Below, piece after piece: positions 1 to 56,800 of a stretch of DNA of 64,000 bases (position 1 is the first letter of the stretch; the number at the start of each line of letters is the position of its first letter). The position numbers and the translations under genes are program-made. A model generated the notes under the pieces. It did no database searches and was not told the DNA's origin. It worked only from the letters and a program-made list of their open reading frames with translations. This DNA is from Cyanophora paradoxa CCMP329 (Eukaryota; Plantae; Glaucophyta): assembly GCA_004431415.1 (NCBI GenBank), contig QPMI01000469.1:124001-188000 (forward strand), in the 5' to 3' direction.

Positions 1-54
1 CTTTGATTTGAAAATGAAGCTCCTCGAAGAAAAAAAGAAAACGCACAAAAAGCT

Positions 55-2652
55 TTACGCATACTTCGTGTAGGAGAGGTACACTGAGAGGCCACGAATC
101 CATTGGAGTTTCCATTTTCTGGAATTCTTTACTTGTGTCTGAAAGCAAGAAATCATGGTGAATATAAAAAACCAGAAATGACGATGAGAAACACGGATCT
201 GCACATTTTGGCTTTCGAGCCGTAAGTTCGGCGAATTGATCAGCAAGCGGGTTACCCCATTTATATTTACTCGGCGTCGAGTCTTCGCAAGGTCCGATTT
301 GGCGTTCCCGAATCTCACTCACAGCTGAGCGCAAGGTAAATTTCTTCAAAACTGACCGCAGAGCGAAAATCCGACGACGTACAGGTTTCGAACTTCCCTC
401 TCAGGTCTTTCACAACAGATAGAAGAGTATTCTTCCGATCCTCTTCATCTGTGATAGCTCTTTGAAGCTCTTCAAGTTCAAGCCTGCAAAACGGTTAAGG
501 AACACAACCTGTACCAAAAAAACAAACGAACTCGTCAGCTCCACTAAGTTCGCGGTCGCCGCGAAGTTTCGTTTTGGAAGCTATAGAAGTGATAGCTTCT
601 TGAACACATGTCAATTGATGGGCAAGTGTCGTTGCGATTTGAAGGCATTTTGCTAATGACGTATCTCTCGCAAACGAGTCCTTGAGTCCATCGACCCTGA
701 GAAGTGATCGTCAATAACCTCAATAAAATCGCCAGTAAAACACTTGCCTTTCGATGAATTTTGAGGTTGATTGGATACTTCGGCGCACAGAAGGAGAACC
801 TTCTTCAGTCGACCATCTGAGTGTGCGGATAAATGTAAGCGATCAAATCCCAGAAACCGATTTTCCAACCGAAGTTCATAAATCCTCCATTGTCATGTCG
901 AGGCCTTCCGTGAGAGTTGGAAAAGACGCTTGGATTTCTGATACAATAAAGAATTCTTGAATAAAGAATAAAGAAAGGAAATTGATTGATTGAAATAATA
1001 CCGGATTTAATTTGTCGGATCGAAACTGCAAGTTCTCGCTCACGCTTTGTTTGAAGAAGTATTTGATTGGGTGAGAGGCTGTACAGGATAAGGTACAAAA
1101 AATGGAGAAATGAACAAAATAGATCGCACCTTGTAGTTTCGCGATTTTCGATGAAGCTTCCAATTTCTCGAATCAGAGCTTTTCCCAGACGAAGCAGCTC
1201 AGTTGCTTGAGGCTGCTCGTGCAAATTGTTTTCTGCCGCCTCGAGCCTGCTAGGTGCATGATTCCTCCAAATTAGGGGTGCACAGATTCGCAAAGAGGTG
1301 CACACCTTGAAGCCATGAAGTTGAAATTCTCACGCTTCATAGTCAAGAGGTCGGAAGCAACTAAAGGTAGCGAAACGAGTCAAATTAAAGCTTTCGATCG
1401 CAGATGGGAGAACAGACACACGCGAAGTACAATCTTGGTCTCCAGGAAAAAGGCGTTTCATTTCATGAACTTCAGCTGTACATGACGAAAGAGATGTTTG
1501 CTTTTCTGATGCGAGAGAAGACGCCGGTGATCCTGCATTGAAAGCATTATAAAGAATTAACGACGTCAAAAACAGAATTAGAGTCACGCCTTCCACTTTG
1601 ATGGAGGGAGTGTTTGCCAGCGGGAAGGGCATGCGCTGCAGCTGAGGAAACGGGAACGGCATGGCTTTCGATTCTGCTTTAGTATTAAAAACGTGTCTGA
1701 CAAGCGCTTCATGCAGGAAACCAGACCTGAATCTCTGGAAGGAGAAGAGCGGAGATCAGACAGTTTATGAGATGCACCTGCCAGGAATAGGTTAACGAAA
1801 ACCAGAAGAAGAAGCGGCGTTTGAGATCGGCTTTACTGTACGAAGGGAAATTTGAACAGAACGCAAGATGTCCAAAAGGATTGCACCGTTCTCTTGGTCA
1901 GTTATGTCGACCTCCGATTTAATTGAACGCTCGAGTGAACTCCCGACAGCCCTGCTGCTTGAGCTTGAAGTCTGCAAAACTTTTTCGATGTCGTCAGAAA
2001 AGTAAAAAAGAATCGGGGGCGCAAACCCTGATTGCCGTCCGAAGCTGAAGGATTCAAACTATCGTCAGAATGATGAAGAGCGACGTTACACTTGCCACGA
2101 ATATCTGCGATGAGAAAAAGATCATTTGAGGCATTTGAGGCATTTGGAGGCATACGAACCTTGAAACTCCTGGAAAAGCTTTACAACCCATAATTTCGTC
2201 TTTTTCGAAAGAGTCGCGAGTTGCAGAATCCTGCGATCTCGTTCTCATCATTACCCAGCGACCAATGCGCAAATACGCAAGGAGACGAGCGAACGAGTCG
2301 GGGTTTGAAGCGTCCAACTCCGCTCTTCGGATGTTATGGAGTTGCTCAACAGCGCTGAGGAGCTCGAAGGAAAAAGAACACAGGTTCTCCTCGGGACTTG
2401 CTTCCAAAGAGAGGCCTTTCTCGGTTCCGGCTGCGTGCTGTAACGCTGTCCGAGCGCTCAAACACTCCTGCACTTTAGTTCCGAGACTGCGCATGCACAG
2501 CAAATCATAAGGAGCAGCAGATAAACAACAGCAATCGAAGCGCACTCTTCACGCCACTTCTCCGCGGCGTCCCTACGAAGGTCTGCGTCCTCAGACGACA
2601 ATGGGTCGCCAGGCCTGCACGATTTCAGAACGCCGGCGTGATTCGAACCCAT
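55..2652 (-). CDS. Multi-exon hypothetical protein(s), helical/charged, divergent from the transposase
   Basis: Chain of minus-strand ORF pieces (2054-2545, 1330-1662, 805-1305, 55-318). No recognisable domain, and the exon structure is not resolved. Confidence 0.3.
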
Positions 2653-3039: not shown

Positions 3040-6000
3040 ATGATCACTTCCCGTCTGCCATGCTGTGTTTACCATAACATTCCAAGCTTTAAGAGTAACA
3101 AGTACAAGCCAGCGCAGATAAACAGTCATGAACGTGAAAGAAGCACAGCCTTGCTTTTGCTCAGAATGCAAAGGCGCCTGGTGTCGGTTCGCACAAGCGC
3201 GATGCATAGAATGAAAGCTTTCTATGGATTCGGTGCACGGCCGGCATTACGCACTCGGATAGCGCGATACTCGGCGTCTGGACGATTACGCGACGGCTGG
3301 GTTCCAGCCGAGAATCTCGAGGAACTGTACATGTTGCCCTACCAAAAACAACAGAGTATAGAGAGCGCCAAAACGTCAACGTAAACAGGCGATCGAGGCG
3401 CTGCAGGCAAGACAGGCAGAAGCATCTCCAGCACATGAAAATGGAATTGAACCTGATGATTCTGGGAACCTCACCGAATCTGATGAGATCTGGCAAGAGT
3501 ATGCTGAGAACTCTGATCAATCTCTATCTTCGGATCTTGAACGCTCGAAACCTGAGGATTATACAAGTGCTCTTTTCACAGACTGCCCAATAACAGTTCG
3601 TACAATGCTACTGAAACCGTAATTTATTCCAGACACTATCTTATCGTCGTTCGATACAGGAAGCTTGCTACACTGCGTTTTGTTCGAGGCTCAAGACTCG
3701 GTTTCCGCAAATTCCTATCGAGAGTTTCAGCTATATCAGCAACTTTTTGAATCAGTGCTTTCTCAAGTTACCAAATCCTGTCCGCCTGGTCGGCTGGCGT
3801 TCGATGATGAATCGCGTCTCGGTATTCGCTGAGGTAAGTTTTATGACGAATGGTTCCGCACAGCGAACTCAACATTCTGCAGCCTTTCATTAGGTTTCGC
3901 CTTTGCACAGCGAACGAGAGCTCCAGGAATCTCGGTTCATTTTGCGATACAGTCTGGATTGAAGACGATTCGAGAAGTGGTGGTGCGAGCAAGAATGCGC
4001 CATGTCTTTGTGGTGGCACTGAGTATAGAACTGCAACTCGAGGCTTCTTTTTTCCTTTGAGCCAATCCTGGCAAGTATTTCTGAACAATCCACAACTATT
4101 GAAGCGTTTCATGTATGTTTCGAGTTTTCGTGGTTCTTCTCCCTCTGACTTCGTCAGGTTCGGAGCCCAGCGGGCCTCGTCAGAACGTGATTCTCCTCCA
4201 CCTTACTACTGCACCTTCAGCAACTGGGAGACGCGTCAAACCCTGGTTCGAGACTACACGGATTCAGATCACTTTCGCTACTACGTGAAAGATGGAAGAG
4301 TACTTCTCCCAGAAAATGGAAAGAAGCGGGGAATTTGCGTGCTTCTTGCGTATTCAACTGACGCGGCAGTAAAGAACCTCTGGTCCGTTTTATATCCCTT
4401 CAAATATTTAGGATTTGCAAACATGTTTTGGGACAGGACTGGAAAAGATTACGGGAGTTTCACGCCAATATTTCTGATCCCCATGACAGCACATCCACAT
4501 TTTCGGTTGCGTTCCGCCAATCCGTGTCCTTGTACATGTCCGTTGCTCACGAAGAGCGCAGAGAAAAATTGAGCGTACTGGCTTTCCTAATCGACGGAAA
4601 AGTTCACAACTTCAACGGCCTTTTTCGGTTATTTTTAACCCCATGGCTAAAAGAAGTGGATCCATGCTCTTCAAAAGCAACTGGGTAGAGCTTTGTATTC
4701 CATTTTCGCCAATCCATGACTTAATGGTAAAAAGCGTGCCATATAGGAATTGCGACACGAACGATATTGAGCATGCATATTTCAGTTGTGTTCTTAACAT
4801 CGACGATCTCCCTGGTCAGGTCGGATCTGCCCGTCTCAGTATGTTTATTTCTTTCACAACTTTTTCTATTCCTTGTCATTATATTAAGCTTGTGTTGAAC
4901 AGAACAATTCAACGCAGTATATGGCAATCCCTTTACAGAAAAAGAGTCAGTCCTGTCTGGGCCAACAACTCGCAACCCACAGTTCAAACAGTGCTGGGAG
5001 CTTCCTGCCGGTGACTGGCGGCGCGACAAGTGCATGTTTACAAAGAAGGATGATGGGCCCGCTCCTGCACGAACAGACGCGCTTATGGTTTGTTTCGAAT
5101 TTCGACATCAGAATACTTCGAATTCATTAACATTCTTCCCGCCTCCAGCGTCAGCGAGGCATTGACGCAGAGAACGCTCGACAAGACAATATGCGTGGTT
5201 TGAAAACAAAAAAAGAGCTACAGGAGTTTCTAAAAGACGATAACAGAGGTAATCAGATCCCTGATTATCGAGGTGGTGTCCCTGATAATCGAGAAGGTGT
5301 TCTCGGTCTCGCTGAAACGGCAAATTTTCCTGGATTCCTCCTTGGACCTCCACAGGACTTCTCCGCTTTCGATAGTGAATTTTTACGTGCTGGGCAGCAC
5401 CATTACGATTTGGATGTGCTCAGATGTGGAGCTCGTCATCTGGACCAAATGCATGCTTTTCAACGAGTAGGGCTCACCTTTCTCTCTGGTATCGCTCTTC
5501 CGCATGATGAATCCGCCCAAGCAAAGCTTGACAGCATTATTCAGTACATTATCATTTCTTATTGCTCGATTAAGCGATTGATTTACACTGCAACAGGAGT
5601 TCATACAGGTTTGATCCGGCGTTGACGTTCCGAATTCGAGACGATCTCCAGCAATACGCGTATCTGGGAACTCCAAAACTGAAACATGCTTGTAGGATCG
5701 CAGCAACCCACTCTACGTGGATGCACTACTCGAGCTCTGAGGTGAGGCCTACTCGAGCTACTTTTGAAAACGACGTTCTCTGAAATGCAAGCAGTTTCGC
5801 GATCCGGACTTTTTGACAACAGCTAAAATAACGAACAAGTTTTCTGAACTGCCGCGCGTCTTATCAGTCCTTCGTGCAACTCTTGATAGCGATTTGGACA
5901 ACACCAATTCCCTCTATAGAATTCTCATGATGAACGAACTCGACTTGCTTCGGGCAACGAGTGCAAAAGTGTTTCCAAGCTTCAATCAATCTCTCAATTA

Positions 6001-7585
6001 TCGACATATTTTCAGGTTTTGTGGAAGGACTATGTGCTTGAGCTTCGCAAACTTGCTGCGATAGTTCACGGAATGCAACGACACTATCGCCCAATTAGCT
6101 TCTGGACAACAATGAATGAGTTTCTTCCGTGCATGTTAGTTTTTTTCCATTGCTTGCTTGCATTGCATAGCATGTAGGCGTTCATCTTACCATTGCTACG
6201 CTTGCAGGATTGACCATATGGCAACGCTAGGCCCTCGTATGCAGTTTGTGCTGCTCAAGTTGAGAGAGGCGCGCACGATATGAAGGCATTACCTGGCATT
6301 GGAGCGCAAACATCTTTGATTCCGAGCGCCGCAAGGCGCTATGTGGTGCGCAGCACAGTGTTCCGGGCACTTCCGAGAATCTTATTTCCGCTTGGAAGGA
6401 AAAAATGTCATGTGCTGTGCTCGAGCAGCATTTCTACGATTTCATGGGACGCATTCCAGGGCTTTTGGACGACGATCGCACTGGGTCGATAATTCGAACT
6501 GTCAAACGAAATATGCCAGGTGTTATGTCCCAAGGAGTTCATACAAAGTTCCACACACGATACGGCTACAAAGTAGAGGGGAGGTGTGTTGTTTTGTTCC
6601 GCGTTATTGTGCTGATTCTGGATTTGACCCGGAATAATCTGCTTTCCCAGTGAACAAGATCCAAATTCACAATATGGGCATCTGCTTAATGCGTACCTGC
6701 GACGCGAGGCAGCTTCAAATTCCCCCCAATTGCGCCCCCTTGCGCGTTTACTCGCACGATTCATGCACGAGAAGCACGCACTTGAGGAGGGGTTAGAGTT
6801 GTACCCGGATGACATTGAAGAAGCTCCGGAACAGGCAGCCCTACGGTGCGTGTCCGGATCAGACTATCTGAAGCTTCCCTGCACTTCTAACTGAGACATA
6901 GATGCGCCTGGGGGAACTGAATTCTGATATTTGGACTCCTCAACCGTCGTACGAGGATACAAGCGTTTTGGAAGAGTCATCGAATGTGAAATGGATAGGA
7001 TTTCCTGCAAACGTCGGAGTGTACTACACAACGTTCTATGCAAACGAGCTCGTTTATTTTGGAGTGGATATGGCTTCGAGCAAACATGACACGTCATGGT
7101 TTTCTTTTGTCGAGAGCGTTTCTGCATCCAAACTTCGAGGTCGGGGTATACTTCCAGTTGGCCGATCTTATCTCTCAATGGAAGCACTTGAATCGCTGCC
7201 ACCGGATACTCTCATCCCAGTCCGGAGGTACGGGCGCGTCAGAGGACTCTTCGAATTCAAGGAGCATGGCGACAAGGCTTCCAATCATCACATAGTGCAT
7301 GTCATCATTTTTGAGCTGCCCGAGTACAACATTCTAGCAAACCTCGATGTTGTTGATACTTCGAAACAGGAGTCCAGAGAGTGGTTGTTTCCGAACGAAT
7401 TCGAGCAGTATCGAATCGAGACAGTCCCTGACTGGAGACACCCACACCTCATTCGCATTGTTCCTCCTCCATCCATCGAGCATTTAGTAGCAGCACAGAA
7501 GTCGTTTCCTTATTTTGATGAATCTGCTCAAACTGCAGTTGTGGTCGATTTCTCAGGCAGAAGACTCGAATTTAATTTCAAATGA
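3040..7585 (+). CDS. CACTA/En-Spm (CMC superfamily) DDE transposase, intron-containing, with one apparent frameshift near 6232
   Basis: Ordered Tnp2-type motifs: ALFTDCPITV (~3570); YSTDAA (candidate D1, 4360); GSFTPIFLIPMTAHPHFR (cf. S.WPV.L...NLPP..R); LFLTPWLKEV; NIDDLPGQ (D2, ~4800); LPAGDWRRDKCMF; RHLDQMH (cf. RHNLDVMH, ~5440); LGP-(frameshift)-YAVCAAQVER (cf. GPV..RWMYPFER, catalytic E, ~6260). The C-terminal exon 6902-7585 has YYTTFYAN...YGRVRGLFEF. The start is uncertain. Confidence 0.85.
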
Positions 7586-7606: not shown

Positions 7607-9960
7607 ACTGAGCCCTGCACTCATGAGAAGAATATTTGGGTCTTTAGGCTTAACGAGTTTCATTGGCAGGTTTATGAGAACATGATTCGGTGATAACGCG
7701 AAAATCAGCAACCAGTATCGTGCAGGGTGTTAAAGAAGCCCTTGTAGCCTTGAACCAGTGAAGAGATGATCAACTGAGCCCTGCACTCATGAGAAGAATA
7801 TTCGAGCCTTTAAGGCTTTATTTGTCGGATCATGAGAACATGATTTGGCGATATCGCGAAAATCAGCAACCAGTGTCGTGCAGGCTGTTTCAGAAGCCCT
7901 TGTGGCCTTGTCCCGTGAAGAGATGATCAACTGAGCCCTGCACTCATGAGAAGAATATTTGGGTCTTTAGGTTTTAAGAGTTTCATTGGCCGGTTCATGA
8001 GAACACCAACGCGAAAATCAGCAACCAGTGTCGTGCAGGCTGTTTCAGAAACCCTTGTGGCCTTGAGACTATGAAGAGATGATCAACTGAGCCCTGCACT
8101 CATGAGAAGAATATTTGGGTCTTTGAGGCTTTATTTGTCGGATCATGAGAACATGATTCAGTCCCAACGAGAAAATCAGCATCCAGTGCCGTGCAGGCTG
8201 TTTTAGAAGCCCTAGTGGCCTTGAGCCCGTGAAGAGATGATCAACTAAGCCCTGCACTCATGAGAAGAATATTTGAGCCTTTAAGGCTTTAAGAGTTTCA
8301 TTGGCCGGTTCATGAGAACACCATTCGGTGATAACGCGAAAATCAGCAACCAGTGTCGTGCAGGCTGTTTCAGAAACCCTTGTGGCCTTGAGACAATGAA
8401 GAGATGATAAACTGAGCCCTGCACTCATGAGAAGCCTTGAAGAATATTCAGATTTGTCGGATCATGAGAACATGATTCAGTGCCAACGAGAAAATCAGCA
8501 TCCAGTGCCGTGCAGGCTGTTTAAGAAGCCTTGTGGCCATGAGCCCGTGAAGAGATGATCAAATAAAACCTGCACTCATGAAAAGATAATTTGAGGCTGA
8601 TCATGAACATGATTTGGCGATATCGCGAAAATAAGCAACCAGTGTCGTGCAGGCTGTTTCAGAAGCCCTTGTGGCCTTGTCCCCGTGAAGAGATGATCAA
8701 CTGAGCCCTGCACTCATGAGAAGAATATTTGGGTTTTTAGGCTTAACGAGTTTCATTGGCCGGTTCATGAGAACACCATTCGGTGATAACGCGAAAATCA
8801 GCATCCAGTTTCGTGCAGGGTGTTTAAGAAGCCCTTGTGGCCTTGAACCAGTGAAGAGATGATCAACTAAGCCCTGCACTCAGGAGAAGAATATCTGGGG
8901 GTTTCGTCTTTAAGGGTTTCATTGGCCGGTTCATGAGACCATGATTCGGTGATAACGCGAAAATCAGCAACCAGTGTCGTGCAAGCTGTTCTTGAAGCCC
9001 TTGTGGCCTTGAGCCCGTGAAGAGATGATCAACTTAGCCCTGCACTCATGAGAAGAATATTTGGGTCTTTAGGCTTTAAGAGTTTCATTGGCCGGTTCAT
9101 GAGAACACCATTCGGTGATAACGCGAAAATCAGCAACCAGTGTCGTGCAGGCTGTTTCAGAAACCCTTGTGGCCTTGAGACTATGAAGAGATGATCAACT
9201 GAGCCCTGCACTCATGAGAAGAATATTTGGGTCTTTGAGGCTTTATATGTCGGATCATGAGAACATGATTCGGTGATAACGCGAAAATCAGCAAACAGTA
9301 TCGTGCAGGGTGTTAAAGAAGCCCTTGTGGCCTTGAACCAGTGAAGAGATGATCAACTTAGCCCTGCACTCATGAGAAGAATATTTGGGTCTTTAGGCTT
9401 TAAGAGTTTCATTGGCCGGTTCATGAGAACCATTCGGTGATAACGCGAAAATCAGCAACCAGTGTCGTGCAGCTGTTTCAGAAACCTTGTGCCTTGAGAC
9501 TATGAGAGATGATCAACTGAGCCTGCACTCATGAGAAGAATATTTGGTCTTGAGGCTTTATATGTCGGATCATGAGAACATGATTCGGTGATAACGCGAA
9601 AATCAGCAAACAGTATCGTGCAGGGTGTTAAGAAGCCTTGTGGCCTTGAACCAGTGAAGAGATGATCAACTTAGCCCTGCACTCATGAGAAGAATATTTG
9701 AGCCTTTAAGGCTTTAAGAGTTTCATTGGCCGGTTCATGAGAACACCATTCGGTGATAACGCGAAAATCAGCAACCAGTGTCGTGCAGGCTGTTTCAGAA
9801 ACCCTTGTGGCCTTGAGACAATGAAGAGATGATCAACTGAGCCCTGCACTCATGAGAAGAATATTCAGATTTGTCGGATCATGAGAACATGATTCAGTGC
9901 CAACGAGAAAATCAGCATCCAGTGCCGTGCAGGCTGTTTTAGAAGCCCTAGTGGCCTTGT
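7607..9960. repeat. Tandem array, about 15 copies of a 137-167-bp unit (mostly 158 or 166 bp), two interleaved subtypes
   Basis: GCCCTGCACTCATGAGAAGAAT (or a close variant) recurs at about 7611, 7777, 7935, 8091, 8250, 8416, 8568, 8705, 8871, 9037, 9203, 9361, 9521, 9674 and 9841. Confidence 0.97.
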
Positions 9961-10002: not shown

Positions 10003-11750
10003 TCATATTTTGCCGTTACATTTCGAGTTTACCGGCTCAAGAAACAATGTTTTTTCCCTACTTATACAGAGAGAGAGAGAGTGAGTTCTCTTTTGGTAAT
10101 GTTCAAGAGTTTGCATTCGGCTTCTTCTTGCTGCGATTCTGTTCGTCGACTTTGTCGCGTCCTCGTTTCGATGACCTGCAATGTCCACCAACACATTGGA
10201 AAGCGCCAGTAATGAACACATTGCGCGTACGTAACGCACATCGCTGAGCTGGTGAAGTAACAAACACATCCTAGGCGGTTGAACTTGTTTGTGTCGTCAC
10301 AAAGTCGAAGTGGTTGAAAGATATGCTTTGAAATTGAGTCCCAAGTCACTCTATACTGTAGCATAAACTGCGAATGCGAATGGGTCGCAAAAAAGGATTT
10401 TATAAAATGGAAACAAATTACTGACCATAACAAGAAGATTGTATGCATTGATTTCGCGTTCAAGTGCTGGCATCCAAATATTGTCTTCCACTTCGTGAAT
10501 TCTCTTCATCATCTGATGCGCTCTCAGAATGCGGCAAAACTGATTGTGCGCTGATTGTGCGCAAACCGCATAGATGTGTCCTGCAAGCTTAAGGTTATGT
10601 CCTTGATCTCGTGTATCGCATTTGAGCTTATACATGCCAGGAATAGTGAGCGGAAAGCTCTCTCGCGCCGGCAGGATGTTGATGGCAGTCGGGTAAAGGA
10701 ATTCTTTTCTGTCACGGCTCTGCTTCCGAGCGACGTAGAATTCATTTGCAGCTTGATTGTATTCGACGGCAAGATGCTGCGTATCATCAGCGTTTGAAAC
10801 TCTGCTGTGAAACATCTTCTTGTGATGCACCTTGAGTATGCACTGGCGATTTGAAGTGAGGTCTGCAAACGATTGCGGTTGACAATTTGGATTGATGACA
10901 AGAACTTTCCAGTTTTTATATGTCGGAGCCTGTAGACGAAGGAGTTCCGGCTCTTGTGCGTCTCCAAGCATGATGCGTTTTGGATGCCCTGGTTCGATCG
11001 CGGGACGAAGCCTGATCTTTTGAAATTTTCCAAAACGCGCTTCGCGTCGAACTGGAATCCAGCGCAAGTCTCCTTGCGTCCGTGTGGGATCGTTAATGTG
11101 AATCTCTTCAAATTCGGCGACGTGTGGGATTCGGATGCAGGAGTCGACGGAAGAGAGCTTTGTGCCAGCACAAAACCCGATTTGCCCGTAGATGTGAGCG
11201 TCTAAACGCGTTTCACCTTCCGGAGAAAGCGCCAAGCAGCATCCACATTTTGCTCGATTGATGGGAAAACGCAATTTGAGTTCCGGATCCACGACAAACT
11301 TGGGATAAAGAAAGCAATCCTTGCATGGCTGTTCATTGACGATTGGACAAAAGGAGCCGCCCTTGCATTTAGTATCCTTGGCAGATGACGGATCGTCAGG
11401 CCCGTCAGAAGTTTGAAGAAAATAATGGAGAAGGTCTTACGGCAGAGCGGGCGATCTCAAAATCGGATTGATCCTCTTCGTCCACGCCCTCAAGCGAGTG
11501 TTGCTTGAACCCCTCGGTTTCGGGTTCGATACACTTTCGGCAGTTAGTTTGAGCAGGCCGGCCCCCATGATGTGTTTGAACAGGTTTCATAATTACCTGC
11601 AGCATTGTAGGCGAAGACAACATCGTGTCGGCGTCTGGAGACGAACGGGAGGAGTCCTGCGTACGAGTCACGATGGTCGACCAACGAAGAATCGTCACTG
11701 AACCTGTCTTGTTCGTCTGCAATATCGATGTTGAAACTGCGCATCGTCCA
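10003..11750 (-). CDS. Hypothetical protein, Cys/His-rich, multi-exon (main exon 10351-11400)
   Basis: 313-aa ORF 10351-11292 that stays open upstream into a Cys-rich stretch (CKGGSFCPIVNEQPCKDC). No family recognised. Confidence 0.5.
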
Positions 11751-27454: not shown

Positions 27455-27466
27455 CTGAGTCTTTGG

Positions 27467-45820: not shown

Positions 45821-45886
45821 ATTCAATTGAATTGAGCCATCATTTCCGAGAAGAGTGCGGGGCGAACGGCGGGGCAGGGGCTTTCT

Positions 45887-46872: not shown

Positions 46873-48872
46873 TTATGCGAGATATTGAATTAACAGCGTG
46901 CTAGGATAGTCGCCAACGCTTACGGTAAAACGCCCTTCAACCCAGGGTGACACAGCACGACGCGCTGACTCCACAAGCTCCTTGGACACGACCAAAGAGA
47001 CCTCAAACTGTCTTGCTCTTTCTTTCGAAATCCCCCGCAACGCCGAGAGTGCAGAAAGGCGTGCCAATGTCCCGTCTTGCCATGGGTATTTGACACTTAG
47101 AGATTCGAGTTTCGGAGATGAAACGGCTGCCTGCGCGTGCAACACGTTGTGAAATCGCCAGTCGAGATCAGCACCAAGTAAAACATACCTGCAGGTACCA
47201 CGGCGGAACGTTGACCGTCGTTAGCTTTGTTAAAAACTGCTGCGACGCGAGGATGACGTCTTCAAGAGTTGTTGATATTATGTGGTCGTCGCGCGTATGC
47301 ATGGATATCCTCATTACGATCTCCAGGGACTTGAGAGATGAACTCGATCTAAACCCCGTAGTAGCGGATCGGAGAACACCCGCTCCAGAATTCGAATCCA
47401 AAGCGGTCTGTGATCGCGGTGTACGTCAAGAATCTTCCAAAAAACTGCCCAGCAACAACCATTACGCACGTTAAACTCGCACGTGAGTCTCATACTCCGA
47501 AGTCTTGTAAGTGCGCCCAGCTCCGCCAAACCAAAACCGGAGTTCTCGGAAACCTGAGAGGAGTAAGCATCTCGCAAATCAAATACTTCTCGCAGCAAAC
47601 GGACCGTAATATCCAACTCTGAAAGATTCAAAAAACGAAGAATAGAAGCAATCGTACGTGGGCTTGCTGCTCCGAGAACGATTTCATCATACGTGTTGCA
47701 AGCGAATCTCAGTGACTTCAAAATACTGGGCTTAAGAGCCTCGAGCGCCTTATCAACGGATTGCGCCTCAGCAGCGTTGTGTGCTCCACAAATGGTCGCT
47801 TTTAAGTCCGTCAAGGGGAGCGGCAGTAGTGCTAGCAGGGATTCCCCTCCACGAAACCCGCTGTGAAGCCGCTGCAGCGCTGGCCACAAACGTGCCATTT
47901 TCTCCTGCGCATTCTGAAATTAGACTGCATCTGAGCATTATCATTTTTCGATTATAATAATGCTCACGGTAAGAGCGGCATCCATGAAATTCGCAATTTC
48001 TATTCCATGCAATTCCGGAGGAATCACAGCGCTGATATCCTCCAGAGTGGGAACGCAGCCTGGAACAGCTGCATCCACGATATCTTGCAAAAGACGTTCT
48101 GAGCCGACCCGTAACGTACGGACGGGAGAACTGGTGACCGACGACAGGAAATCGATTGCAACTCCAAACTCTCGGGGGAATTCAGTTTGCCCGCAATATC
48201 CTAGGAGGCCTGCACCGAAGAACAATTCCTCAGGGCCGCTTGCGGGGGGCTTCGTCAAAGCTGAAATAATTTCTGCCATTCAACGGTCAGGCAACGGAGA
48301 TGAATTGATTGCGCTCGTGACGCACTCTGTATGAGGCGAACATACGACTCTGCGGCAGACTCTGCCATTATACACGGACACCACCGAGGATTAACGTTCA
48401 TGACGGCTGAGCCCAGAACGTCATATATCTCGAGCCGCCTACATCCAGCAAACATTCGGGTCTCCACGAGTGCCACTATTCGATTGTGCTGCCGGGAAAG
48501 GGCTTTTACGATCCGCTGTTCGTCCGAAACCGCGCTCGCGTGCGGACGTGCACGCCACGGCGCTGCGTTTGTGCTATAAAAAGAAGACAATTTGCTCTCC
48601 GCGGCGGGCGCGGTACGCTCGCACAAGATGTCTACGTCAATTTGCAGCCGTTCCCACAGCACGTCTCGGACGAGACGGCCAAGGCGCCGATTCAAGCGCC
48701 AGAGCTGACACGTATCGTATGCCTCCATAGCTTCCACGTGGCTAAATATGCGCACGACAAGATCGTCGGGGAGCATTGCGAAGAAGTCTCTCCCGTCATC
48801 GGACGAAGTGCTAGCTGAAGCGCGCTCGTTCTTTCGCTTCGCTCGAGCGCAGAGCTGCATTGAGAGCTGCAC
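46873..48872 (-). CDS. F-box plus LRR-like protein (multi-exon and/or frameshifted)
   Basis: FFAMLPDDLVVRIFSHV...LWRLNRRLGRLVRDVLWERL is an F-box. Downstream LRR-like segments include WPALQRLH, LKSLRFAC, LSELDIT, LTRLRSMRL and PKLESLSV. Confidence 0.75.
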
Positions 48873-48933: not shown

Positions 48934-49840
48934 ATGGACGTCGACGAGCCCGCCTACCGGCCGCAGTGGCAACCGAATCTTGTCACGCGGACATCATCGT
49001 GGGGACGTGGTGCGTGGCACTGTGCGCCTGCAGTTGCCGCGCTTTGAATTTGAATCGCCTTGCAGAGCGCACGGCGTCGCTGCTGGCGCTGCTGAAAAGC
49101 AACGACCTGAGCCTCGCCGATCTGCACAGCTCGAGTGGGAAGTGGAATGATTGGCGTGCGAACAAAGAGCTCGACAAGCTGATCGATCGCATCGCTTCCG
49201 AGCACGATCTAGAAGGACTTGACTCCATCCAGCTGCTTGGTCACAAAACCGACATTCCCGAGCATCAGGCACGCCAGCGCATGCATATGCAAGCTTGCGC
49301 GGCGCTTCTCCTTGCTGACCTCTACATACTTCTAGCTCCAGCGCCTGCTCGCGGTCATCACGAAGCAAGCCAGTAAGCTCTGCCAATTGCGCGCTCTTCG
49401 CTGCCACGGCTGGGGCTTGGACGACGCTTCGTTTGAGGCGTACATCCTGCCGATTCTCGGAATTCCGGGGCTCTGTATCCGTGGTGTAAATGTTGGCGAG
49501 AATGACAAGGTACGTTAACGTTGATCATGTGGTGATTATGTCACAGGTACGTTGATTGGGTATGTCACAGTTGACGAACGCGGCTGGCGTGGCGTTTTTT
49601 AAGGCCCTTCAAACGGCGCAAGACTGCGTTGGCTTCTACATCGGCGAGGGAAAGCTCACTCGGCAGACACACAAAGCTATTGCCCTTATCATCTCCGAGC
49701 GATGGGCCGCCCTTGACGGGGACTTGCGCAAGGAGGTCAAGCTCTGCCAGCCAGCCATCAGTTTCTTCCGAATTTCAACTCGAAAGCGTCAACTTCGTCC
49801 GCGAAAATGGAAGGCCAGCCGAGCCCCTGCCCCGGTTTAG
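48934..49840 (+). CDS. Small RNI-like leucine-rich-repeat protein, multi-exon
   Basis: The spliced reading LRALRCHGWGLDDASF...IRGVNVGENDK|LTNAAGVAFFKAL...FYIGEGKLTRQTHKAI fits LxxLxLxxNxI(T)xxG...AL periodicity. Confidence 0.5.
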
Positions 49841-51322
49841 GGTGCTTTCTACATTGATGTACGACTAATAGAAAATGGAAGAAAAACGTTCGCCCCGCAC
49901 TCTTCTCAGAAATGATGGCTCGGTCGCTGGGGGGGGCATCGGCCGTCTTCCTAGAAAATGGAAGGGCAACCAAGCCTCTGCTCCGCGAATATGATAGCCA
50001 TCACGACTTTTAGAAAAAGGACGATAAACGAGCGCCCCGCACTCTTCTCGGAAATGATGGCTCGGTCGCTGGGTGGAGCATTGAGGCAAGCCGAGCCCCT
50101 GCCCCGGTTAATGGTGCTTTCTACCTTGATGAACAGCTATATATATATTGTAAGACTGCGTTGGCTTCTACATCGGCGAGGGAAAGCTCACTCGGCAGAC
50201 ACACAAAGCTATTGCCCTTATCATCTCCGAGCGATGGGCCGCCCTTGACGGGGACTTGCGCAAGGAGGTCAAGCTCTGCCAGCCAGCCATCAGTTTCTTC
50301 CGAATTTCAACTCGAAAGTGTCAACTTCGTCCGCGAAAATGGAAGGCCAGCCGAGCCCCTGCCCCGGTTTAGGGTGCTTTCTACATTGATGTACGACTAA
50401 TCGAAAATGGAAGAAAAACGTTCGCCCCGCACTCTTCTCAGAAATGATGGCTCGGTCGCTGGGGGGGGCATTGAGGCAAGCCGAGCCCCTGCCCGGTTAA
50501 TGGTGCTTTCTACCTTGATGAACAGCTATATATATATTGTAAAACTGCGTTGGCTTCTACATCGGCGAGGGAAAGCTCACTCGGCAGACACACAAAGCTA
50601 TTGCCCTTATCATCTCCGAGCGATGGGCCGCCCTTGACGGGGACTTGCGCAAGGAGGTCAAGCTCTGCCAGCCAGCCATCAGTTTCTTCCGAATTTCAAC
50701 TCGAAAGTGTCAACTTCGTCCGCGAAAATGGAAGGCCAGCCGAGCCCCTGCCCCGGTTTAGGGTGCTTTCTACATTGATGTACGACTAATCGAAAATGGA
50801 AGAAAAACGTTCGCCCCGCACTCTTCTCAGAAATGATGGCTCGGTCGCTGGGGGGGGCATTGAGGCAAGCCGAGCCCCTGCCCCGGTTAATGGTGCTTTC
50901 TACCTTGATGAACAGCTATATATATATTGTAAGACTGCGTTGGCTTCTACATCGGCGAGGGAAAGCTCACTCGGCAGACACACAAAGCTATTGCCCTTAT
51001 CATCTCCGAGCGATGGGCCGCCCTTGACGGGGACTTGCGCAAGGAGGTCAAGCTCTGCCAGCCAGCCATCAGTTTCTTCCGAATTTCAACTCGAAAGTGT
51101 CAACTTCGTCCGCGAAAATGGAAGGCCAGCCGAGCCCCTGCCCGGTTTAGGGTGCTTTCTACATTGATGTACGACTAATCGAAAATGGAAGAAAAACGTT
51201 CGCCCCGCACTCTTCTCAGAAATGATGGCTCGGTCGCTGGGTGGGCATTGAGGCAAGCCGAGCCCCTGCCCCGGTTAATGGTGCTTTCTACCTTGATGAA
51301 CAGCTATATATATATATTGTAA
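49620..51322 (+). repeat. Composite tandem array (~389-bp units) made of an LRR exon plus fragments related to the 157-bp repeat
   Basis: ACTGCGTTGGCTTCTACATCGGCGAGG occurs at ~49623, 50155, 50544 and 50934. Each unit also carries AATGGAAGGCCAG..GAGCC, TAGGGTGCTTTC and AAATGATGGCTCGGTC motifs shared with 53030-53830. Confidence 0.95.
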
Positions 51323-51927
51323 ATGTCAAAAGCACTCTAAAGCGAGGCTGGGACTAGTCTGACCCCCCCGCCCCCACCCCACCCCCGAGTTTCCGCGCCC
51401 CCGAGCGTGCACGTGAGCGTTGTTCAGCGTTTTTGGCACAAGAGATAGAGGAACAGATCTAGAGGCAGCAGCACGCTCACTTTCGCTTCGCCCGATCGCG
51501 GAGCTGCATTGGAAGTAAGTCTTAGTTACTCTACACGATCCTACGCGCTGCCGGCTTTCTACGGTTTCTACCGTCGCTGCCGGCTTTCAAATCGGTTTCA
51601 GTGTGTACCCCCCTAATCACTGTCGACTTCAACGCGTACGGGTCGTCCTTATCAACAGATGCAGCATGCACAACAGCACACATTCCGAGATTGCGCGGTC
51701 TGCACAACTCCCTAACGCGCTTCTCCCGTGCTCTTCTCCCTAACGCGCTTCTCCCGTGCACGCGCAGCGAACTCCAGAGGTGTCTTGCTCCGTCTGCGGC
51801 GTCACGAATTCGAACGCTGCGGTGCTGAAATGCGAGAGATGTGACGAAGGGTTCGCCCGCCAGGTTGACCGCGTACGCAGCTCTTTGTGACTGCGATCCG
51901 CGCGCAGGTTGTGTATTCGTTGCCTAG

Positions 51928-52853
51928 ATGAGCAGACTGGAGCGCGGGGACCTGCCAATCGTTGTCCTTTCGGGCTCCAGTTGGTTCAATATACTCCAAA
52001 CCGCCAGCGAGATCGGGCTCCATTTGGCACCATATACTCCAAACGCTTTGTGGATGAGTTTCCGCACGACGGACTCCCGGAAGGTTCCAATTCTTGTTAT
52101 ACGGTGCGGGCAGCAAAATATTTGCGGCAATGCTTCTTTTTGGCTGCATTTAACTTTCGTCTTGGTTAGGACTGCCATTTGGACTTCGCTGCAGCCCATC
52201 TTTTGAAGGATTTGATTGCGCACGGGGACGTCGCTCTTCTATGGGCGCTCTCTATCGATGATGCGCTTTCGATAATGGAAGCGCTCGCAAATCGAGACCC
52301 TGCAATCAGCCGCAGTGTCATTGACAACATCGGTGGAAAGTGGAAGCTATGTTTCTTGCCGATTGTAGTCTGGAAAGGCTTGTACGCATCCACAGCCTGG
52401 CAACACTGGTGTCTTCTCGTCTTCGACTTCCGTTCAAGGCGGATTCGCTGGTTTGACTCGCTGCAAGACCCGATTGAAAACGCATTGGAGACGTTGCTTG
52501 TGGATGCTTTCCGTGATTTTACAATCGTCGACGAAACAGACAAGATCGAGATTCGAAACAATGTCCTTCAAGACAAGCACGGATCCGATGCCGCTAGCCA
52601 CTGTGGTCCTTGGGTCTTGTTTTTCATGGAGTCTGTCGCACGAGAGGTCGACTTCAGGCCGGAGCGTGCTGTCTCCGACTGGAAACATTGCGAAGATTTG
52701 GAAGGTGATGATGATGAGCGCAAGTTCATGGACACGATGGCGGAGGAGTATAAAAAGGTGTTCGTTGAAAACGATCCTGGTACCGCGCCGTCCGGTCCGT
52801 CTTGCTTACGTTTTGGCATCAATGTGGGTTTTCATGCATTTCTTTTTATTTGA
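51928..52853 (+). CDS. SENP8/NEDP1-like C48 protease, copy 2 (diverged paralog of copy 1)
   Basis: DCHLDFAAAH...LCFLPIV...QHWCLLVFD...IRWFDSL...LQDKHGSDAASHCGPW. It has the same upstream exon (PFGT.Y.K.F.DE.P) and the same intron position as copy 1. Confidence 0.75.
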
Positions 52854-53029
52854 AAAGGTCTCTCGTTTGCGGACATTTTCAACATCTCAGGGCGAGACCA
52901 TTCATCATTTCATTTTCATTCTTTTTGATTCACAAAACGCAGTGATGACGAAGGGTGCTGAACAATCACGCAACATCGGGAGGCTGTATCACGTAGTCAT
53001 TCAAGGTTGATTACGAACAAAATAAACAT

Positions 53030-53830
53030 CAAACATGACTTGCATCTTGACTAACAGAAAAAGAAAGATAAATGTTCGCCCGGCACTCCTCCCCGGAAAT
53101 GATGGCTCGGTCACTGGGTCGGGCATCGGACCTCGTCCTCGAGAATGGAAGGCCAGACGAGCCTCTGCTCCGCTCTAGGGTGCTTTCGAACATGATTAGC
53201 ATCTGGACTAACAGAAAAAGAAAGATAAATGTTCGCCCGGCACTCCTCCCCGGAAATGATGGCTCGGTCACTGGGTGGGGCATCGGACCTCGTCCTCGAG
53301 AATGGAAGGCCAGACGAGCCTCTGCTCCGCTCTAGGGTGCTTTCGAACATGATTAGCATCTGGACTAACAGAAAAAGAAAGATAAATGTTCGCCCGGCAC
53401 TCCTCCCCGGAAATGATGGCTCGGTCACTGGGTGGGGCATCGGACCTCGTCCTCGAGAATGGAAGGCCAGACGAGCCTCTGCTCCGCTCTAGGGTGCTTT
53501 CGAACATGATTAGCATCTTGACTAACAGAAAAAGAAAGATAAATGTTCGCCCGGCACTCCTCCCGGAAATGATGGCTCGGTCACTGGGTGGGGCATCGGA
53601 CCTCGTCCTCGAGAATGGGAGGCCAGACGAGCCTCTGCTCCGCTCTAGGGTGCTTTCGAACATGATTAGCATCTTGAATAACAGAAAAAGAAAGATAAAT
53701 GTTCGCCCGGCACTCTTCCCCGGAAATGACGGTCACTGGGTGGCCTGGCCCAGTGGGGCATCGGACCTCGCCTTCGAGAATGGAAGGCCAGACGAGCCTC
53801 TGCCCCGCTTTAGGGTGCTTTCGACAAATA
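53030..53830 (+). repeat. Tandem array of about 5 x 157-bp units, candidate subterminal repeat
   Basis: AACAGAAAAAGAAAGATAAATGTTCGCCCGGCAC occurs at ~53053, 53210, 53367, 53524 and 53680. Confidence 0.97.
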
Positions 53831-56800
53831 TAAATATCAAGCGTGGCAGAGGTCTATTGGCTCCGGTGGTGAAAAACAGCACTTTGCAATTTCTACACCC
53901 GAACTACCAGAAACACAAGCTACATTTACCTCTATCTACCATAGGGAAACTACGCCGCCGCCGTCGCCCTGCAGCCGCGCCGTCGCCGCCGCCGCTCTAA
54001 TTGGTCGCCCTGATTATGCTGACGCCGGATCCGGAACGATTGCGACATCTAGATCGCTCTCCGGAACGATCGCGACATCTAGATCGCGACATCGAGTAAA
54101 ACGGCGAAGAGCTCGAGGTCGCACAATGTCATGTGGAGGGCCGTGCAGCTCGATAAAGACCTCCTTTAGCTTTTCGGAGTCCTGCACCAGCCTCGAGGCC
54201 GCTTGGCACGAGTAGCCGTTGGCCTCCGCCGTCCTTCGTCCTCACATGCATGCCGGAATCGACCATGCCGATTTTCACGTCGATGATCGTGTCGTCGAGG
54301 AAGTGAACGCGAGCTCCCGGAAACGGCAGCAAGTCAAGGCGAGTTGCAGACCATGACCTCTTCGAATAACTGCGCCGACGTCGACGATCGTTTCTGAAGT
54401 GCGCCGACAGCGCCAGGCTCCCGTCCTGCACGAACGGGGCTGCGCAGTTAATCGACTTTTCAGCTTGATATTGATAAGTAGATACGGATGAACGCACCCG
54501 GCCGGCCAGGTTCGCCCTCTAAGGCCTCCCGAACGAGCCTCGCGCCCTCACCCCCCTCGGTGACTTGGACGTAGGGCCCTCGGCGACCTGCAGCGGGCAA
54601 GAAGGACAAGGTGCCCTCGCCTGCCGCCGCGGATATTCAAAAGGACGCACCGATTGAAGAAATCAATCCAAGAAGAGGCAATGCCGGTGCACATCGTTTT
54701 GCTGAACCGCTGCAAGGGACGCCCGCGCGACGCGTACGTCGACGGAATTTCGTCAACGAACGAATCACCAAAGCAATTGAAGAGGACGGAGCTGTAGAGC
54801 TCGTGTTTTTTGTTGAGTATGTACAACTCGAACTCCCAACGACGGCAGCGGTTGCAGTACCTGGAAGTCCCTTTCGTTAAACTCTTGTACGTATACTCAA
54901 ATTCAAGGTCGAGCTTATACTACAGAAATTTCGCACCACTGAAGCTCCAACATGATCATGAGCTTCAGCCATTGCTGACCTTGAGCTGAGCTCGAGATGC
55001 TTACGTAGAGCTGAAGCTTGCTGAGCTCTTTGCACCATTGACATTTAACAATCGCCTCTGGAAAGGGGTCTGAAAAGGGGCCTCCGTATCCAGAAGAAGT
55101 GAAAGAAGTGGAAGACCGTAGTGTGACGTAGTGAGGATCTGCTTGCTTCATCAACACGCACTCCGAGGGCCCGTCTTCAAATCTCGATCAACCCGTCCTC
55201 GAGGAAGGCCGAGGAAGGCCGAGCAGCCCATCAGCGCCTGCCCTCCCCGAACCATGAGATCTTTGGCGTCAGATCTTTCAGAAGAACCGACATTCAAGGC
55301 GTGGCAGGTGGATGAGGGGACGCACCTCGAACCGGGGGAGACGCTCGCGCGCGGCAACGGGTGCGCGCCACCCCTTCTGCGCGCCGCAACTCTTCATGAT
55401 GATCTCGTCGCCTTCAAGCTTGCGGAATATGACATGATGATATCCTCGCCTTGCTGCTGTCAACAAGAGTTTGAAAGGTGTGCATCCGCGAGCGCGGCCG
55501 CCGCGCACCTGAAGATCCCGTCGAAGCCACGCAGTGGATTCAGCGTTGAAGCCCCGACGATCCCCAGTACTAGTGGCCCGCCGGCGTATCCCAGGGTTCG
55601 AAGCCGCAAAAAAAGTTCAGTTTGCAACATCTTTGTACTCCTTCTCCTATTACTCCGACCCTTCTCACACCGACCACGAGCGACCCACGGCGCACGGCCG
55701 CTTGAGCTTGCCCAGGCCCATAGCTTCGCTAGAACCGTTCTGCACATCAGCCGTAGCAATTCCGAAGCGCGGCACTTCAAATCCGTGCACCCGAGCCGAC
55801 CGACCCGGCCAATCCGGCCGGAGGTCTGTAGCTTGTCGACAGTACTAGAAGCAAGCTACTTAGTCAGGCGAAACGATTCCTGCGGTGCTCCGCCACGTGG
55901 CTCAAGACCGTCCGCTGGCTGTGGTCTTTCACCACTCCAGCGAGTCACCGGACGCAAGGCCGACCGTCGGCCGATGCGTGAACATGCAACTGAGAGATCC
56001 TAACCCTTATCAGCGCGTCCTGGTGCAGTCGGGCGGCAGCCCGGGCGAACCCCTCGGTGTAATAGGTGCGCGGACTCGGTGTAATAGTCATACACCCAGG
56101 GTGTAATAGGAATCCGACTCCCAGTGTCTGGCAGCCTTCAAGTGCATATCGAATTGAGTATACCAATGAGAGCGACAACTCAACCACTGGCCTGCGATTC
56201 ACAAGTTCCCCACTTACCAAACATGCTGGCACGACTGTTGGTAGCCCAGGCTGGACCACCCATGGAGCACACTCCACTCAGTGAGTTTGACTGTTCGCAC
56301 CGTAGACAATGCTGGCAGTTTGAGTCTGCCGTAGTACTAAACCGTTGAACGGAATTTTCTTCCAAGGGGAACATGGGTTAATCTACTATGTAGCAAATTT
56401 AAAGCTAGGCACCCCGGCCGCGGGCCCCGATGTCCGGTTTCATAGCCTAGTAGTCACTGAGTGTGCTGTGATCATGATCATGCCATGATGCCAGCCGCCA
56501 CTGAGGCACGGCCGTGATCATGACGCCGTCACGGCGTTTGCATCAGTGCTGTGACTCGCCGAGTCGGGTGCACCTAGGCCTGCACGTGCACGATGCACGA
56601 TGTGACTTGTGTATTTGAGCTGCGACTGTTGCCAGCCTGGTTTCCCACTGAGTCGAGCCACTCGTACCATGTACCCCAGTCAGTAGTCTCGCTGTACCCT
56701 CCGGGACCGCACCACGGCTCCCAATACAGCCCCACCACCCCTCGGGGCAATCCCGCGTGTAGCGCACGGGCTGGGAGCACAGCTGGGCAGCCACAGCACA

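What the first reader, a model, noticed from the sequence alone, without database searches (positions are those of the whole stretch)
1..53946. Candidate giant CACTA-type transposon carrying a chromatin, SUMO and ubiquitin counter-silencing toolkit
Seen: a CMC transposase followed by ~46 kb of tightly packed intron-containing genes. Most recognisable domains are chromatin writers or readers (DOT1, SET, PWWP-like, ADD/PHD) or ubiquitin-like-modifier machinery (Ulp1, two SENP8-like proteases, tandem SUMO-like domains, 3-4 F-boxes), plus a degenerate RNA-silencing-type exonuclease. The block is punctuated by tandem arrays and ends in a repeat array plus a CMC-like end. Known: Ulp1 domains occur in some CACTA, Mutator and Zisupton elements, and Arabidopsis VANDAL elements encode anti-silencing proteins that target their own tandem repeats. 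Inference: this is one mobile unit that rewrites its own chromatin and redirects host proteolysis. I know of no CACTA element described with this size and cargo set.
Basis: partly seen in the sequence, partly recalled or inferred. Interest (0 to 1): 0.92.

Follow-up and report, generated by a model that had tools for sequence, protein, structure and literature searches.

The report
Giant transposon carrying chromatin-modifying genes
A stretch of at least 54,000 bases in an unidentified microbial eukaryote looks like an unusually large cut-and-paste transposon carrying about twenty extra genes, many of them for marking histones or for removing SUMO/NEDD8 tags, possibly to keep itself from being silenced; whether it moves as one piece could not be shown.

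Summary
Largely real, not proven. Bases 1-53,946 form a compositionally distinct block holding a very divergent CACTA/CMC-like transposase (3,128-7,585; ordered DDE and HxxxxH motifs, no profile hit), about 20 intron-containing genes and six arrays. It ends in a 157-bp array and a CCCTA terminus. DOT1 is supported by ordered motifs only. PWWP, the SUMO-like pair and the exonuclease are weak. The terminal repeat family occurs only in the last 8.1 kb, so the terminus is tied to the transposase only indirectly (paralogous proteases, composition). The left end, target-site duplication and other copies could not be tested; no element-level relative was found in any collection searched. Best reading: a compound giant CMC-type element, larger than described EnSpm/Plavaka elements (15-20 kb), whose cargo may write active histone marks and strip SUMO/NEDD8 (inferred). 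Main rival: two adjacent related elements. New variant of a known kind.

The parts
1..2600 (-). One or more unidentified intron-containing genes running off the left edge; the element's left end is not in the window
   Evidence: coding-potential segments; Pfam blank; same composition as the block
3128..7585 (+). CACTA/CMC-like DDE transposase with about 10 introns. Motifs: FPL 4,051; STDA (D1) 4,357; DLPG (D2) 4,805; HLDQMH about 5,437; YGN...ER (putative E) about 6,262. No C-x2-C after D2. Apparent frameshifts near 3,175 and 3,765
   Evidence: no Pfam or database hit exon by exon
7607..9959 (.). Non-coding array, 158-166-bp unit, about 15 copies, directly after the transposase stop
10351..11764 (-). 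Unidentified gene with a Cys-rich start and a 361-codon exon
   Evidence: blank
12128..15093 (+). F-box-like gene 1 (LPxEI motif near 12,680) with a long C-terminal region
   Evidence: pattern match; Pfam blank
15711..17556 (+). SENP8/ChlaDub-like C48 protease 1 with H-D-Q-C catalytic set. Upstream part is 82% identical to the start of F-box gene 1 and is followed by 225-bp repeats
   Evidence: Pfam E 9.7e-5; PDB ChlaDub2 8.5e-6, SENP8 2e-3; duplication
17752..18923 (+). Ulp1/SENP1-type SUMO protease, catalytic motifs present in successive exons
   Evidence: Pfam Peptidase_C48 E 1.1e-6 and 3.3e-5 on two exons; translation
18976..20790 (.). 87% GC array, 144-145-bp unit, 12.3 copies, 99% uniform, upstream of the next gene
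21441..27160 (+).
   Evidence: Pfam zf-RING_4 E 2.5e-4; nearly all PDB hits are RING proteins
27467..28143 (-). Cys-rich pre-SET, SET and post-SET region; best solved relatives are H3K36 methyltransferases NSD3, SETD2 and ASH1L
   Evidence: Pfam SET E 2.6e-12; PDB E about 1e-5, vs 2e-3 for H3K4 and 9e-3 for H3K9 enzymes
29040..29140 (-). Possible PWWP-like motif split by an intron (weak)
   Evidence: by eye; Pfam blank
29358..30660 (-). DOT1-like methyltransferase over four exons (FGE, DVG, SLEI, WMNN, KPGLR in order). Lies head-to-tail with the PWWP-like and SET parts, possibly one gene starting near 31.7 kb
   Evidence: Pfam/PDB/plasmid searches blank or discordant
32165..35085 (+).
   Evidence: all annotated tblastn matches shown are class-III aminotransferases; profile of three bacterial enzymes ranks this exon first of 1,647 segments, E 1.1e-4, partly circular; motif chain
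35205..36050 (+). F-box-like gene 2, with an in-frame stop at 35,256-35,258
36272..37190 (-). Unidentified gene
   Evidence: Pfam blank
37290..38250 (.). Non-coding array, unit about 199 bp; at most weakly related to the 166-bp array
   Evidence: z 3.6; p 0.05-0.07
38265..39490 (-). Unidentified gene
39855..42270 (+). Gene with a possible degenerate DEDDy 3'-5' exonuclease-like exon (39,855-40,457), followed by coiled-coil repeats; exonuclease call unverified
   Evidence: motif resemblance only; blank; fold model pLDDT 32
42282..43488 (+). Gene with 139-bp exon-intron repeats and two tandem ubiquitin/SUMO-like domains (42,742-42,963 and 43,240-43,461; 61% identical, dN 0.27, dS 0.62)
43660..45820 (.). 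Two unidentified genes (minus strand 43.7-44.7 kb; plus strand 44,924-45,820)
   Evidence: Pfam blank
45834..46702 (-). Inverted, headless copy of the right end: repeat fragment, 42-bp subterminal motif (95%), 157-bp array of 3.9 copies (98%) and 104 bp of the protease-2 3' end (93%). The terminal about 32 bp with CCCTA is absent
46876..48872 (-). F-box gene 3
   Evidence: Pfam F-box-like E 2.3e-4
48934..51315 (+). Short unidentified gene whose 3' part merges into a 389-bp array (49,620-51,315) of the same repeat family as the terminal array
   Evidence: (z 52)
51780..52853 (+). PHD-like zinc finger plus SENP8-like C48 protease 2; 43-47% identical to protease 1 (dN 0.44, dS 0.85)
   Evidence: Pfam E 8e-6
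53029..53838 (+). Subterminal 157-bp array, 5 copies
53858..53946 (-). Putative right terminus, reading inward 5'-CCCTATGGTAG; flanked by AAA
   Evidence: composition step

Best explanation
The block is most of a giant, compound CACTA/CMC-type cut-and-paste element whose left end lies upstream of the window. Shown by sequence: a DDE transposase with CMC motifs, about 20 accessory genes that have duplicated and shuffled within the element, and a right end with a CCCTA tip and subterminal arrays. Inferred history: an 8.1-kb module made of two opposing right ends of sibling copies became the right arm; its inner tip was lost, so only the outer end and a distant left end remain for the transposase to pair. 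Inferred function: the cargo keeps the element's long DNA expressible. The SET (H3K36 class) and DOT1 (H3K79) enzymes would write gene-body marks that oppose heterochromatin. Ulp1 would remove the SUMO that silencing complexes rely on. The F-box, RING, SENP8-like and ubiquitin-like proteins would engage cullin ligases to remove or decoy host repressors. This copy may be ageing, since it shows apparent frameshifts and one in-frame stop, although long-read errors could explain them.
For: Ordered CMC motif chain absent from 150 simulated sequences and HxxxxH present, as described for CMCT transposases (PMC12730594). The tip matches the CCC/CMCWR termini quoted for CACTA elements (PMC3227409). The composition step coincides with the tip and dwarfs any internal step. 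Protease paralogues sit at 16.8 and 52.2 kb with a shared upstream exon, and F-box genes occur on both sides of the 45.8-kb junction. dN is below dS in both paralogue pairs. Cargo is far more divergent than host orthologues usually are: SET only E 1e-5 to NSD/SETD2, and no protease relative in 5.8 billion proteins. No housekeeping gene was recognised. Most recognisable domains are chromatin or ubiquitin-like machinery. Precedents: SET-bearing giant Plavaka, CACTA-ULP, SUMO-dependent transposon silencing in flies (bioRxiv 10.1101/533091, PMC10363806; listed, titles and abstract starts only).
Against: No left end, target-site duplication, second copy or empty site could be seen. The terminal repeat family never occurs left of 45,834. 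A weak composition shift sits at 44.5-45 kb (gain 36, null 95th percentile 30, null maximum 43). The transposase and DOT1 have no profile-level support, and the C-x2-C motif is missing. The arrays share no common motif. The aminotransferase-like gene and about ten unknown genes do not fit a pure counter-silencing kit. The flank used for contrast is itself transposon-like. There is no expression or activity data.
Confidence: 0.55

Rival explanations
1. Two related but separate elements lie side by side: an 8.1-kb non-autonomous, Pack-CACTA-like unit (45,834-53,946; F-box, protease, mirror-image arrays) that has lost its left tip, and a large transposase-bearing element whose own right end was deleted or overwritten. 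The 54 kb never moved as one.
For: Mirror arrangement of the 42-bp motif and 157-bp array at both ends of the module, 93-98% identical; repeat family restricted to the module; module slightly richer in GC, with a weak change point near 44.75 kb; the two proteases are only 43-47% identical, as expected for sister families.
Against: The inner copy includes the 3' end of the protease gene, so it derives from a right end and is not an ordinary left end. It lacks the tip, and no target-site duplication brackets the module. No other terminus was found for the 1-45-kb part. Even on this reading a transposase-bearing block of at least 45 kb remains.
Confidence: 0.27
2. The block is one element, but its cargo serves transposition or is passive: chromatin readers tether integration, proteases and ligases control transposase turnover, and the rest is captured sequence drifting under weak selection, as in Pack-type elements.
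For: Heterogeneous cargo including a metabolic enzyme fold; dN/dS about 0.45-0.5 is only moderate constraint; one F-box has a stop; no shared array motif; most accessory genes of other giant elements have unknown function (PMC12477816).
Against: Catalytic residues of all three proteases and the SET NHSC motif are retained despite extreme divergence; genes are multi-exon and apparently whole, not fragments; the two methyltransferase classes both point to active marks.
Confidence: 0.3
3. A lineage-specific cluster of fast-evolving host genes that happens to contain a transposase gene and to abut a small transposon.
For: Genes carry normal introns; no multi-copy evidence is available; the organism's lineage appears absent from the databases, so divergence may partly reflect poor sampling.
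Against: Internal duplications and exon shuffling, arrays at gene ends, a uniform composition that includes the transposase, no conserved housekeeping gene recognised in 54 kb, and very weak matches for families whose host orthologues are normally well conserved (own knowledge).
Confidence: 0.1
4. An intron-invaded fragment of an endogenous giant virus or another large element, into which a CMC transposase inserted. Giant viruses also encode SET, Ulp1, F-box and RING proteins (own knowledge).
For: Gene classes overlap with giant-virus accessory genes; one protease's best solved relative is a bacterial-type ChlaDub.
Against: No capsid, polymerase, packaging ATPase or RNA polymerase domain in roughly 60 exons scanned; no relative in IMG/VR; the transposase has no ends of its own and matches the cargo in composition.
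Confidence: 0.07

Closest known systems
Giant EnSpm/Plavaka elements of red algae (Bostrychia 17.4-19.1 kb, bioRxiv 10.1101/2025.02.11.637652; Chondrus 16-20 kb, PMC6431247)
   Same: CMC-clade transposase with accessory genes including a SET domain; tandem arrays beside accessory genes; proposed self-modification of chromatin
   Different: About three times longer; about 20 genes instead of 3-5; no DNA methylase or ParB/2OG gene recognised; adds DOT1-like, three C48 proteases, F-boxes, RING and ubiquitin-like domains; CCC end, not the TGT or CATCA ends given for fungal Plavaka
Giant EnSpm and KDZ elements of Ectocarpus (to 15.2 and 30.3 kb, PMC12477816) and Zisupton-3_cRei (31.7 kb, PMC9977147)
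   Same: Large DDE elements with extra genes, nested or compound structure and often pseudogenised transposases
   Different: Longer than any of these; transposase motifs are CMC-like, not KDZ; cargo dominated by histone and ubiquitin-like enzymes
Plavaka giant repeats of Amoebidium (to 50 kb, PMC11244446)
   Same: Similar size; gene cluster flanked by a CMC-clade transposase in a protist
   Different: Those are intron-poor tandem clusters rich in tyrosine recombinases; this block is intron-rich with diverse chromatin and protease genes
CACTA-ULP and KAONASHI-MULE elements of plants (PMC2528002)
   Same: Ulp1/C48 protease carried by a cut-and-paste element
   Different: One ULP domain there; here one Ulp1 plus two SENP8-like paralogues and many more genes
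VANDAL/VANC anti-silencing system of Arabidopsis (PMC5735166)
   Same: Proposed logic: element-encoded proteins counter silencing; non-coding tandem arrays
   Different: VANDALs are Mutator-like (own knowledge) and act on DNA methylation through a short motif repeated across arrays. Here there is no shared motif, no CpG depletion (CpG ratio 1.06-1.23), and the candidates are enzymes

Membership tests
CACTA/EnSpm (CMC/CMCT clade) | DDE triad with ordered CACTA-type motifs | tested here: met
   chain at 4,051/4,357/4,641/4,805/5,443, 0 of 150 nulls (patterns from own knowledge, chosen post hoc); putative E near 6,262 by eye
CACTA/EnSpm (CMC/CMCT clade) | Profile match to Transposase_21/DUF4218-type models | tested here: inconclusive
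CACTA/EnSpm (CMC/CMCT clade) | H(3-4)H motif between second D and E (PMC12730594) | tested here: met
   HLDQMH at about 5,437-5,454
CACTA/EnSpm (CMC/CMCT clade) | C(2)C motif between second D and E (PMC12730594) | tested here: not met
   no C-x2-C in any frame of the exon after DLPG; the aligned position appears to read GNPFT. Hence reported as CMC-like, not filed as canonical EnSpm
CACTA/EnSpm (CMC/CMCT clade) | Terminus 5'-CCC / CMCWR | tested here: met
   CCCTA at 53,946 reading inward; consensus quoted in PMC3227409. A five-base match alone is common; its weight comes from the adjoining array and composition step
CACTA/EnSpm (CMC/CMCT clade) | Paired terminal inverted repeats at both ends | not testable with these tools
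   left end outside the window; no partner tip inside it; no match in metagenomes
CACTA/EnSpm (CMC/CMCT clade) | 2-3-bp target-site duplication | not testable with these tools
   only the right flank (AAA) is visible
CACTA/EnSpm (CMC/CMCT clade) | Subterminal repeats | tested here: met
   157-bp array ending about 110 bp from the tip; related 389-bp array and inverted copy inside
CACTA/EnSpm (CMC/CMCT clade) | Dispersed copies with different flanks | not testable with these tools
Plavaka lineage | Termini TGT..ACA or CATCA..TGATG | tested here: not met
   tip is CCCTA vs PMC12730594
Plavaka lineage | Red-algal PAG cassette (methylase-SET, ParB-2OG) or TET/JBP gene | tested here: inconclusive
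   SET present, no methylase/ParB/2OG Pfam hit; several exons unscanned or too short
VANDAL/VANC | One short motif repeated through the element's non-coding arrays | tested here: not met
   no significant shared 6-9-mer between inner and terminal arrays
VANDAL/VANC | Mutator-type transposase and VANC homologue | tested here: not met
   motifs are CMC-type; no MULE Pfam hit on transposase exons; VANC not searched separately
Endogenous giant virus | NCLDV hallmark genes | tested here: not met
   none in the Pfam scans of the longer exons; no IMG/VR relatives; coverage incomplete

The most novel reading that the evidence does not exclude
A single mobile CMC-type transposon of more than 54 kb, longer than any I found described for this clade, carrying a self-contained anti-silencing kit. 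The kit may include a fused DOT1-PWWP-SET protein that writes both H3K79 and H3K36 methylation, together with SUMO and NEDD8 proteases and cullin-ligase adaptors.
Probability: 0.35. Interest if true: 0.87.

Novelty: new variant of a known kind. Interest (0 to 1): 0.66.

Why it matters
Described EnSpm/Plavaka elements reach 15-20 kb with 3-5 genes. An element three times that size with about 20 genes would extend DDE cut-and-paste elements towards Starship-like cargo capacity in a non-fungal lineage. Few transposon-encoded anti-silencing systems are understood (VANC; TnpA, own knowledge). A transposon that carries its own H3K36/H3K79 writers and SUMO/NEDD8 proteases would give named enzymes with assayable activities, making it testable whether transposons escape silencing by disguising themselves as active genes. 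It would also help explain why Ulp1 domains recur in transposons. If the block is two elements or passive cargo, it is still an unusually large CMC-like element from an unsampled lineage.

Tried and rejected
Searches that found nothing usable: phmmer of a three-exon in-frame transposase stretch against 1.84 billion representatives; word-indexed searches with protease 2 and the last transposase exon; the SET exon gave two generic SET proteins on short contigs; terminal 24-mer in metagenomes and a subterminal 21-mer in viral contigs; protease alignment in viral, metagenome and prokaryote collections; Rfam. A single-sequence AlphaFold model of the exonuclease-like exon had pLDDT 32 and its fold search was meaningless. 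My self-trained gene finder over-spliced and was discarded. A scan for other CMC-type end pairs with duplications gave only chance or within-array matches. An apparent shared GCCCYGCACTC motif between the 166-bp and terminal arrays is not above chance. ADD/PHD was rejected in favour of RING for 25.2 kb. Three papers (Yuan and Wessler 2011, tried under two ids; Iyer 2014) were not held. The contig is not human.

Full report
Setting. The window is from a non-human eukaryote with 40-70-nt GT-AG introns. Its lineage seems absent from the databases: every search for element-level relatives was blank. All protein searches were made exon by exon, by reference. The joined spliced models were not searched, as the operators instruct, and this is the main reason several domain calls stay at motif level.

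The block and its edge. With arrays masked, segments of 1-53 kb share one signature (GC 0.46-0.53, TpA 0.43-0.62, ApA 1.16-1.32), while 54-64 kb differs (GC 0.58, TpA 0.68-0.69, ApA 0.91-1.07). The best single change point is a flat optimum from 53.25 to 55.75 kb, with gain about 195. The best point inside the block, at 44.75 kb, gains 36 against a permutation 95th percentile of 30 and maximum of 43. At 53,946 five 157-bp units are followed by about 110 bp ending, read inward, in CCCTATGGTAG, the only exact occurrence. That fits the CCC or CMCWR termini quoted for CACTA elements (PMC3227409). The flank is itself transposon-like, so the contrast is element versus other repeats, not element versus host genes.

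Transposase. The plus-strand gene at 3,128-7,585 shows, in order, FPL, STDA, a P-x3-E motif, DLPG, HLDQMH and YGN...ER. A five-motif chain written from my knowledge of CACTA transposases occurs once here and in none of 150 Markov simulations of the block. The patterns were fixed after viewing the sequence, so this overstates significance. [quoted passage not shown] Pfam is silent on every exon. I therefore call it CMC-like and do not file it as canonical EnSpm. Two apparent one-base frameshifts lie in the 5' third. Homopolymer losses in the array at 9.4-9.6 kb suggest long-read error in this assembly, so decay and error cannot be separated.

Cargo. Coding-potential scanning and inspection give about 20 further genes on both strands. 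Supported by libraries: SET (E 2.6e-12), three C48 proteases and one F-box. The SET domain's best solved relatives are NSD3, SETD2 and ASH1L at about 1e-5, ahead of H3K4 (2e-3) and H3K9 (9e-3) enzymes; that margin is modest. Protease 1 matches ChlaDub2 (8.5e-6) and SENP8 (2e-3) with H, D, Q and C retained. The Ulp1 at 17.8-18.9 kb keeps its motifs across exons. The finger at 25.2 kb has an exact C3HC4 spacing and RING proteins as its best hits, so 'ADD/PHD' is replaced by RING. DOT1 rests on five motifs in order over four exons (0 of 150 nulls, same caveat), without library support. DOT1, a weak PWWP-like motif and SET lie head-to-tail on the minus strand. Only about 40 bp, ending in a good splice acceptor, separate the preceding stop from the SET start, and a stop-free splice path exists. 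One DOT1-PWWP-SET gene is therefore possible but unproven. The tandem domains at 42.7 and 43.2 kb return SUMO- or ubiquitin-like top hits in three searches, none significant. The exonuclease is unsupported. Both paralogue pairs have dN below dS (0.44/0.85 and 0.27/0.62).

The complication. Outside them lies an inverted 95% copy of the 42-bp subterminal motif, and inside them an inverted 93% copy of the 3' end of protease 2. The last about 32 bp with the CCCTA tip are missing. Because it carries a piece of the protease gene, this is a right end of a sibling copy in reverse, not a normal left end. Profile searches place every member of this repeat family between 45,834 and 53,841. The 166-bp, 199-bp, 139-bp and GC-rich arrays are unrelated to it, and no short motif is shared. 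So the terminus certainly belongs to the last 8.1 kb. Its link to the transposase 46 kb away is indirect: paralogous proteases with a shared upstream exon at 16.6 and 51.9 kb, F-box genes on both sides, and similar composition.

How it probably works. Shown: the anatomy above. Established knowledge: CMC transposases cut and paste whatever lies between two tips, using subterminal repeats; H3K36 and H3K79 methylation mark transcribed chromatin and oppose silencing (own knowledge); SUMO is needed for transposon silencing in flies (bioRxiv 10.1101/533091 and PMC10363806, seen only as titles and abstract starts); F-box proteins act through neddylated cullins (own knowledge). Inferred: loss of the inner tip left the outer end to pair with a far left end, so the whole compound can move. 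Also inferred: the cargo writes active marks on the element, strips SUMO from repressors and routes them to degradation. CpG is not depleted (ratio 1.06-1.23), which points to histone-based more than DNA-methylation-based conflict, or to a young element. My probabilities: transposon-derived block about 0.85; one mobile unit about 0.55; counter-silencing as the main cargo role about 0.5.

Rivals. On structure: two adjacent related elements (0.27), a host gene cluster (0.10), or an endogenous giant-virus fragment (0.07). On function, independently of structure: targeting, turnover or passive cargo (0.3).

Comparison with known systems. Giant EnSpm/Plavaka elements with SET-containing accessory genes and adjacent arrays are known in red algae at 16-20 kb. 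EnSpm reaches 15.2 kb and KDZ 30.3 kb in Ectocarpus, Zisupton 31.7 kb in Chlamydomonas, and Plavaka-flanked clusters 50 kb in Amoebidium. ULP domains are common in plant CACTA and Mutator elements. Capture of chromatin domains by transposons is widespread. I found no report of a transposon-borne DOT1 or of this combination, within an open-access library only. The element works like a giant accessory-gene EnSpm. Membership is not established: one motif is missing, and paired ends, duplication and copy number could not be tested. It does not meet the VANDAL criteria.

Verdict. A real and unusual element: new variant of a known kind, interest 0.66. The most novel reading not excluded, a single element of more than 54 kb with an enzymatic anti-silencing kit, has probability about 0.35 and interest 0.87. 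Reading the upstream sequence and finding a second copy would settle the structural question.

Noticed in passing
window 56,909-57,148 and 63,645-63,883: A 238-bp direct repeat, 100% identical, with TG...CA-like ends brackets about 7 kb containing a 600-codon gag-like frame (60,715-62,517, minus) with a Cys/His knuckle and three small arrays; no pol and no clear target duplication. Probably a recent non-autonomous LTR-like element.
   Followed up: partly
window 53,950-55,200 (minus): Frameshifted Cys-rich coding remnant resembling KDZ-type CxC domains by eye, reading towards the element's right end, which may have interrupted it; no Pfam hit.
   Followed up: partly
window 18,976-20,790: The 87% GC, 99% uniform 144-bp array is alien to the 48% GC block, ends in a degenerate unit and sits just upstream of the 21.4-kb gene; origin unexplained.
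   Followed up: partly
window 12,122-12,360 vs 15,763-15,988: The start of F-box gene 1 is duplicated (82%) in front of protease 1: exon shuffling inside the element.
   Followed up: no
window 49,620-49,939: The 389-bp array unit includes the 3' coding part of the neighbouring gene, and most non-coding arrays sit at gene 3' ends, suggesting arrays grow from gene ends.
   Followed up: no
window 33,250-34,170: Class-III aminotransferase-like domain that seems to keep the PLP lysine motif (GKA); unexpected cargo.
   Followed up: yes
window 9,400-9,600: Array units with repeated single-base losses in homopolymers, suggesting unpolished long-read sequence; relevant to all apparent frameshifts.
   Followed up: no
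window 59,880-59,920, 26,252-26,278, 54,030-54,087: GATC-based microsatellites (TGATCA and TCTAGATC units) recur in both flank and element and may help identify the host lineage.
   Followed up: no
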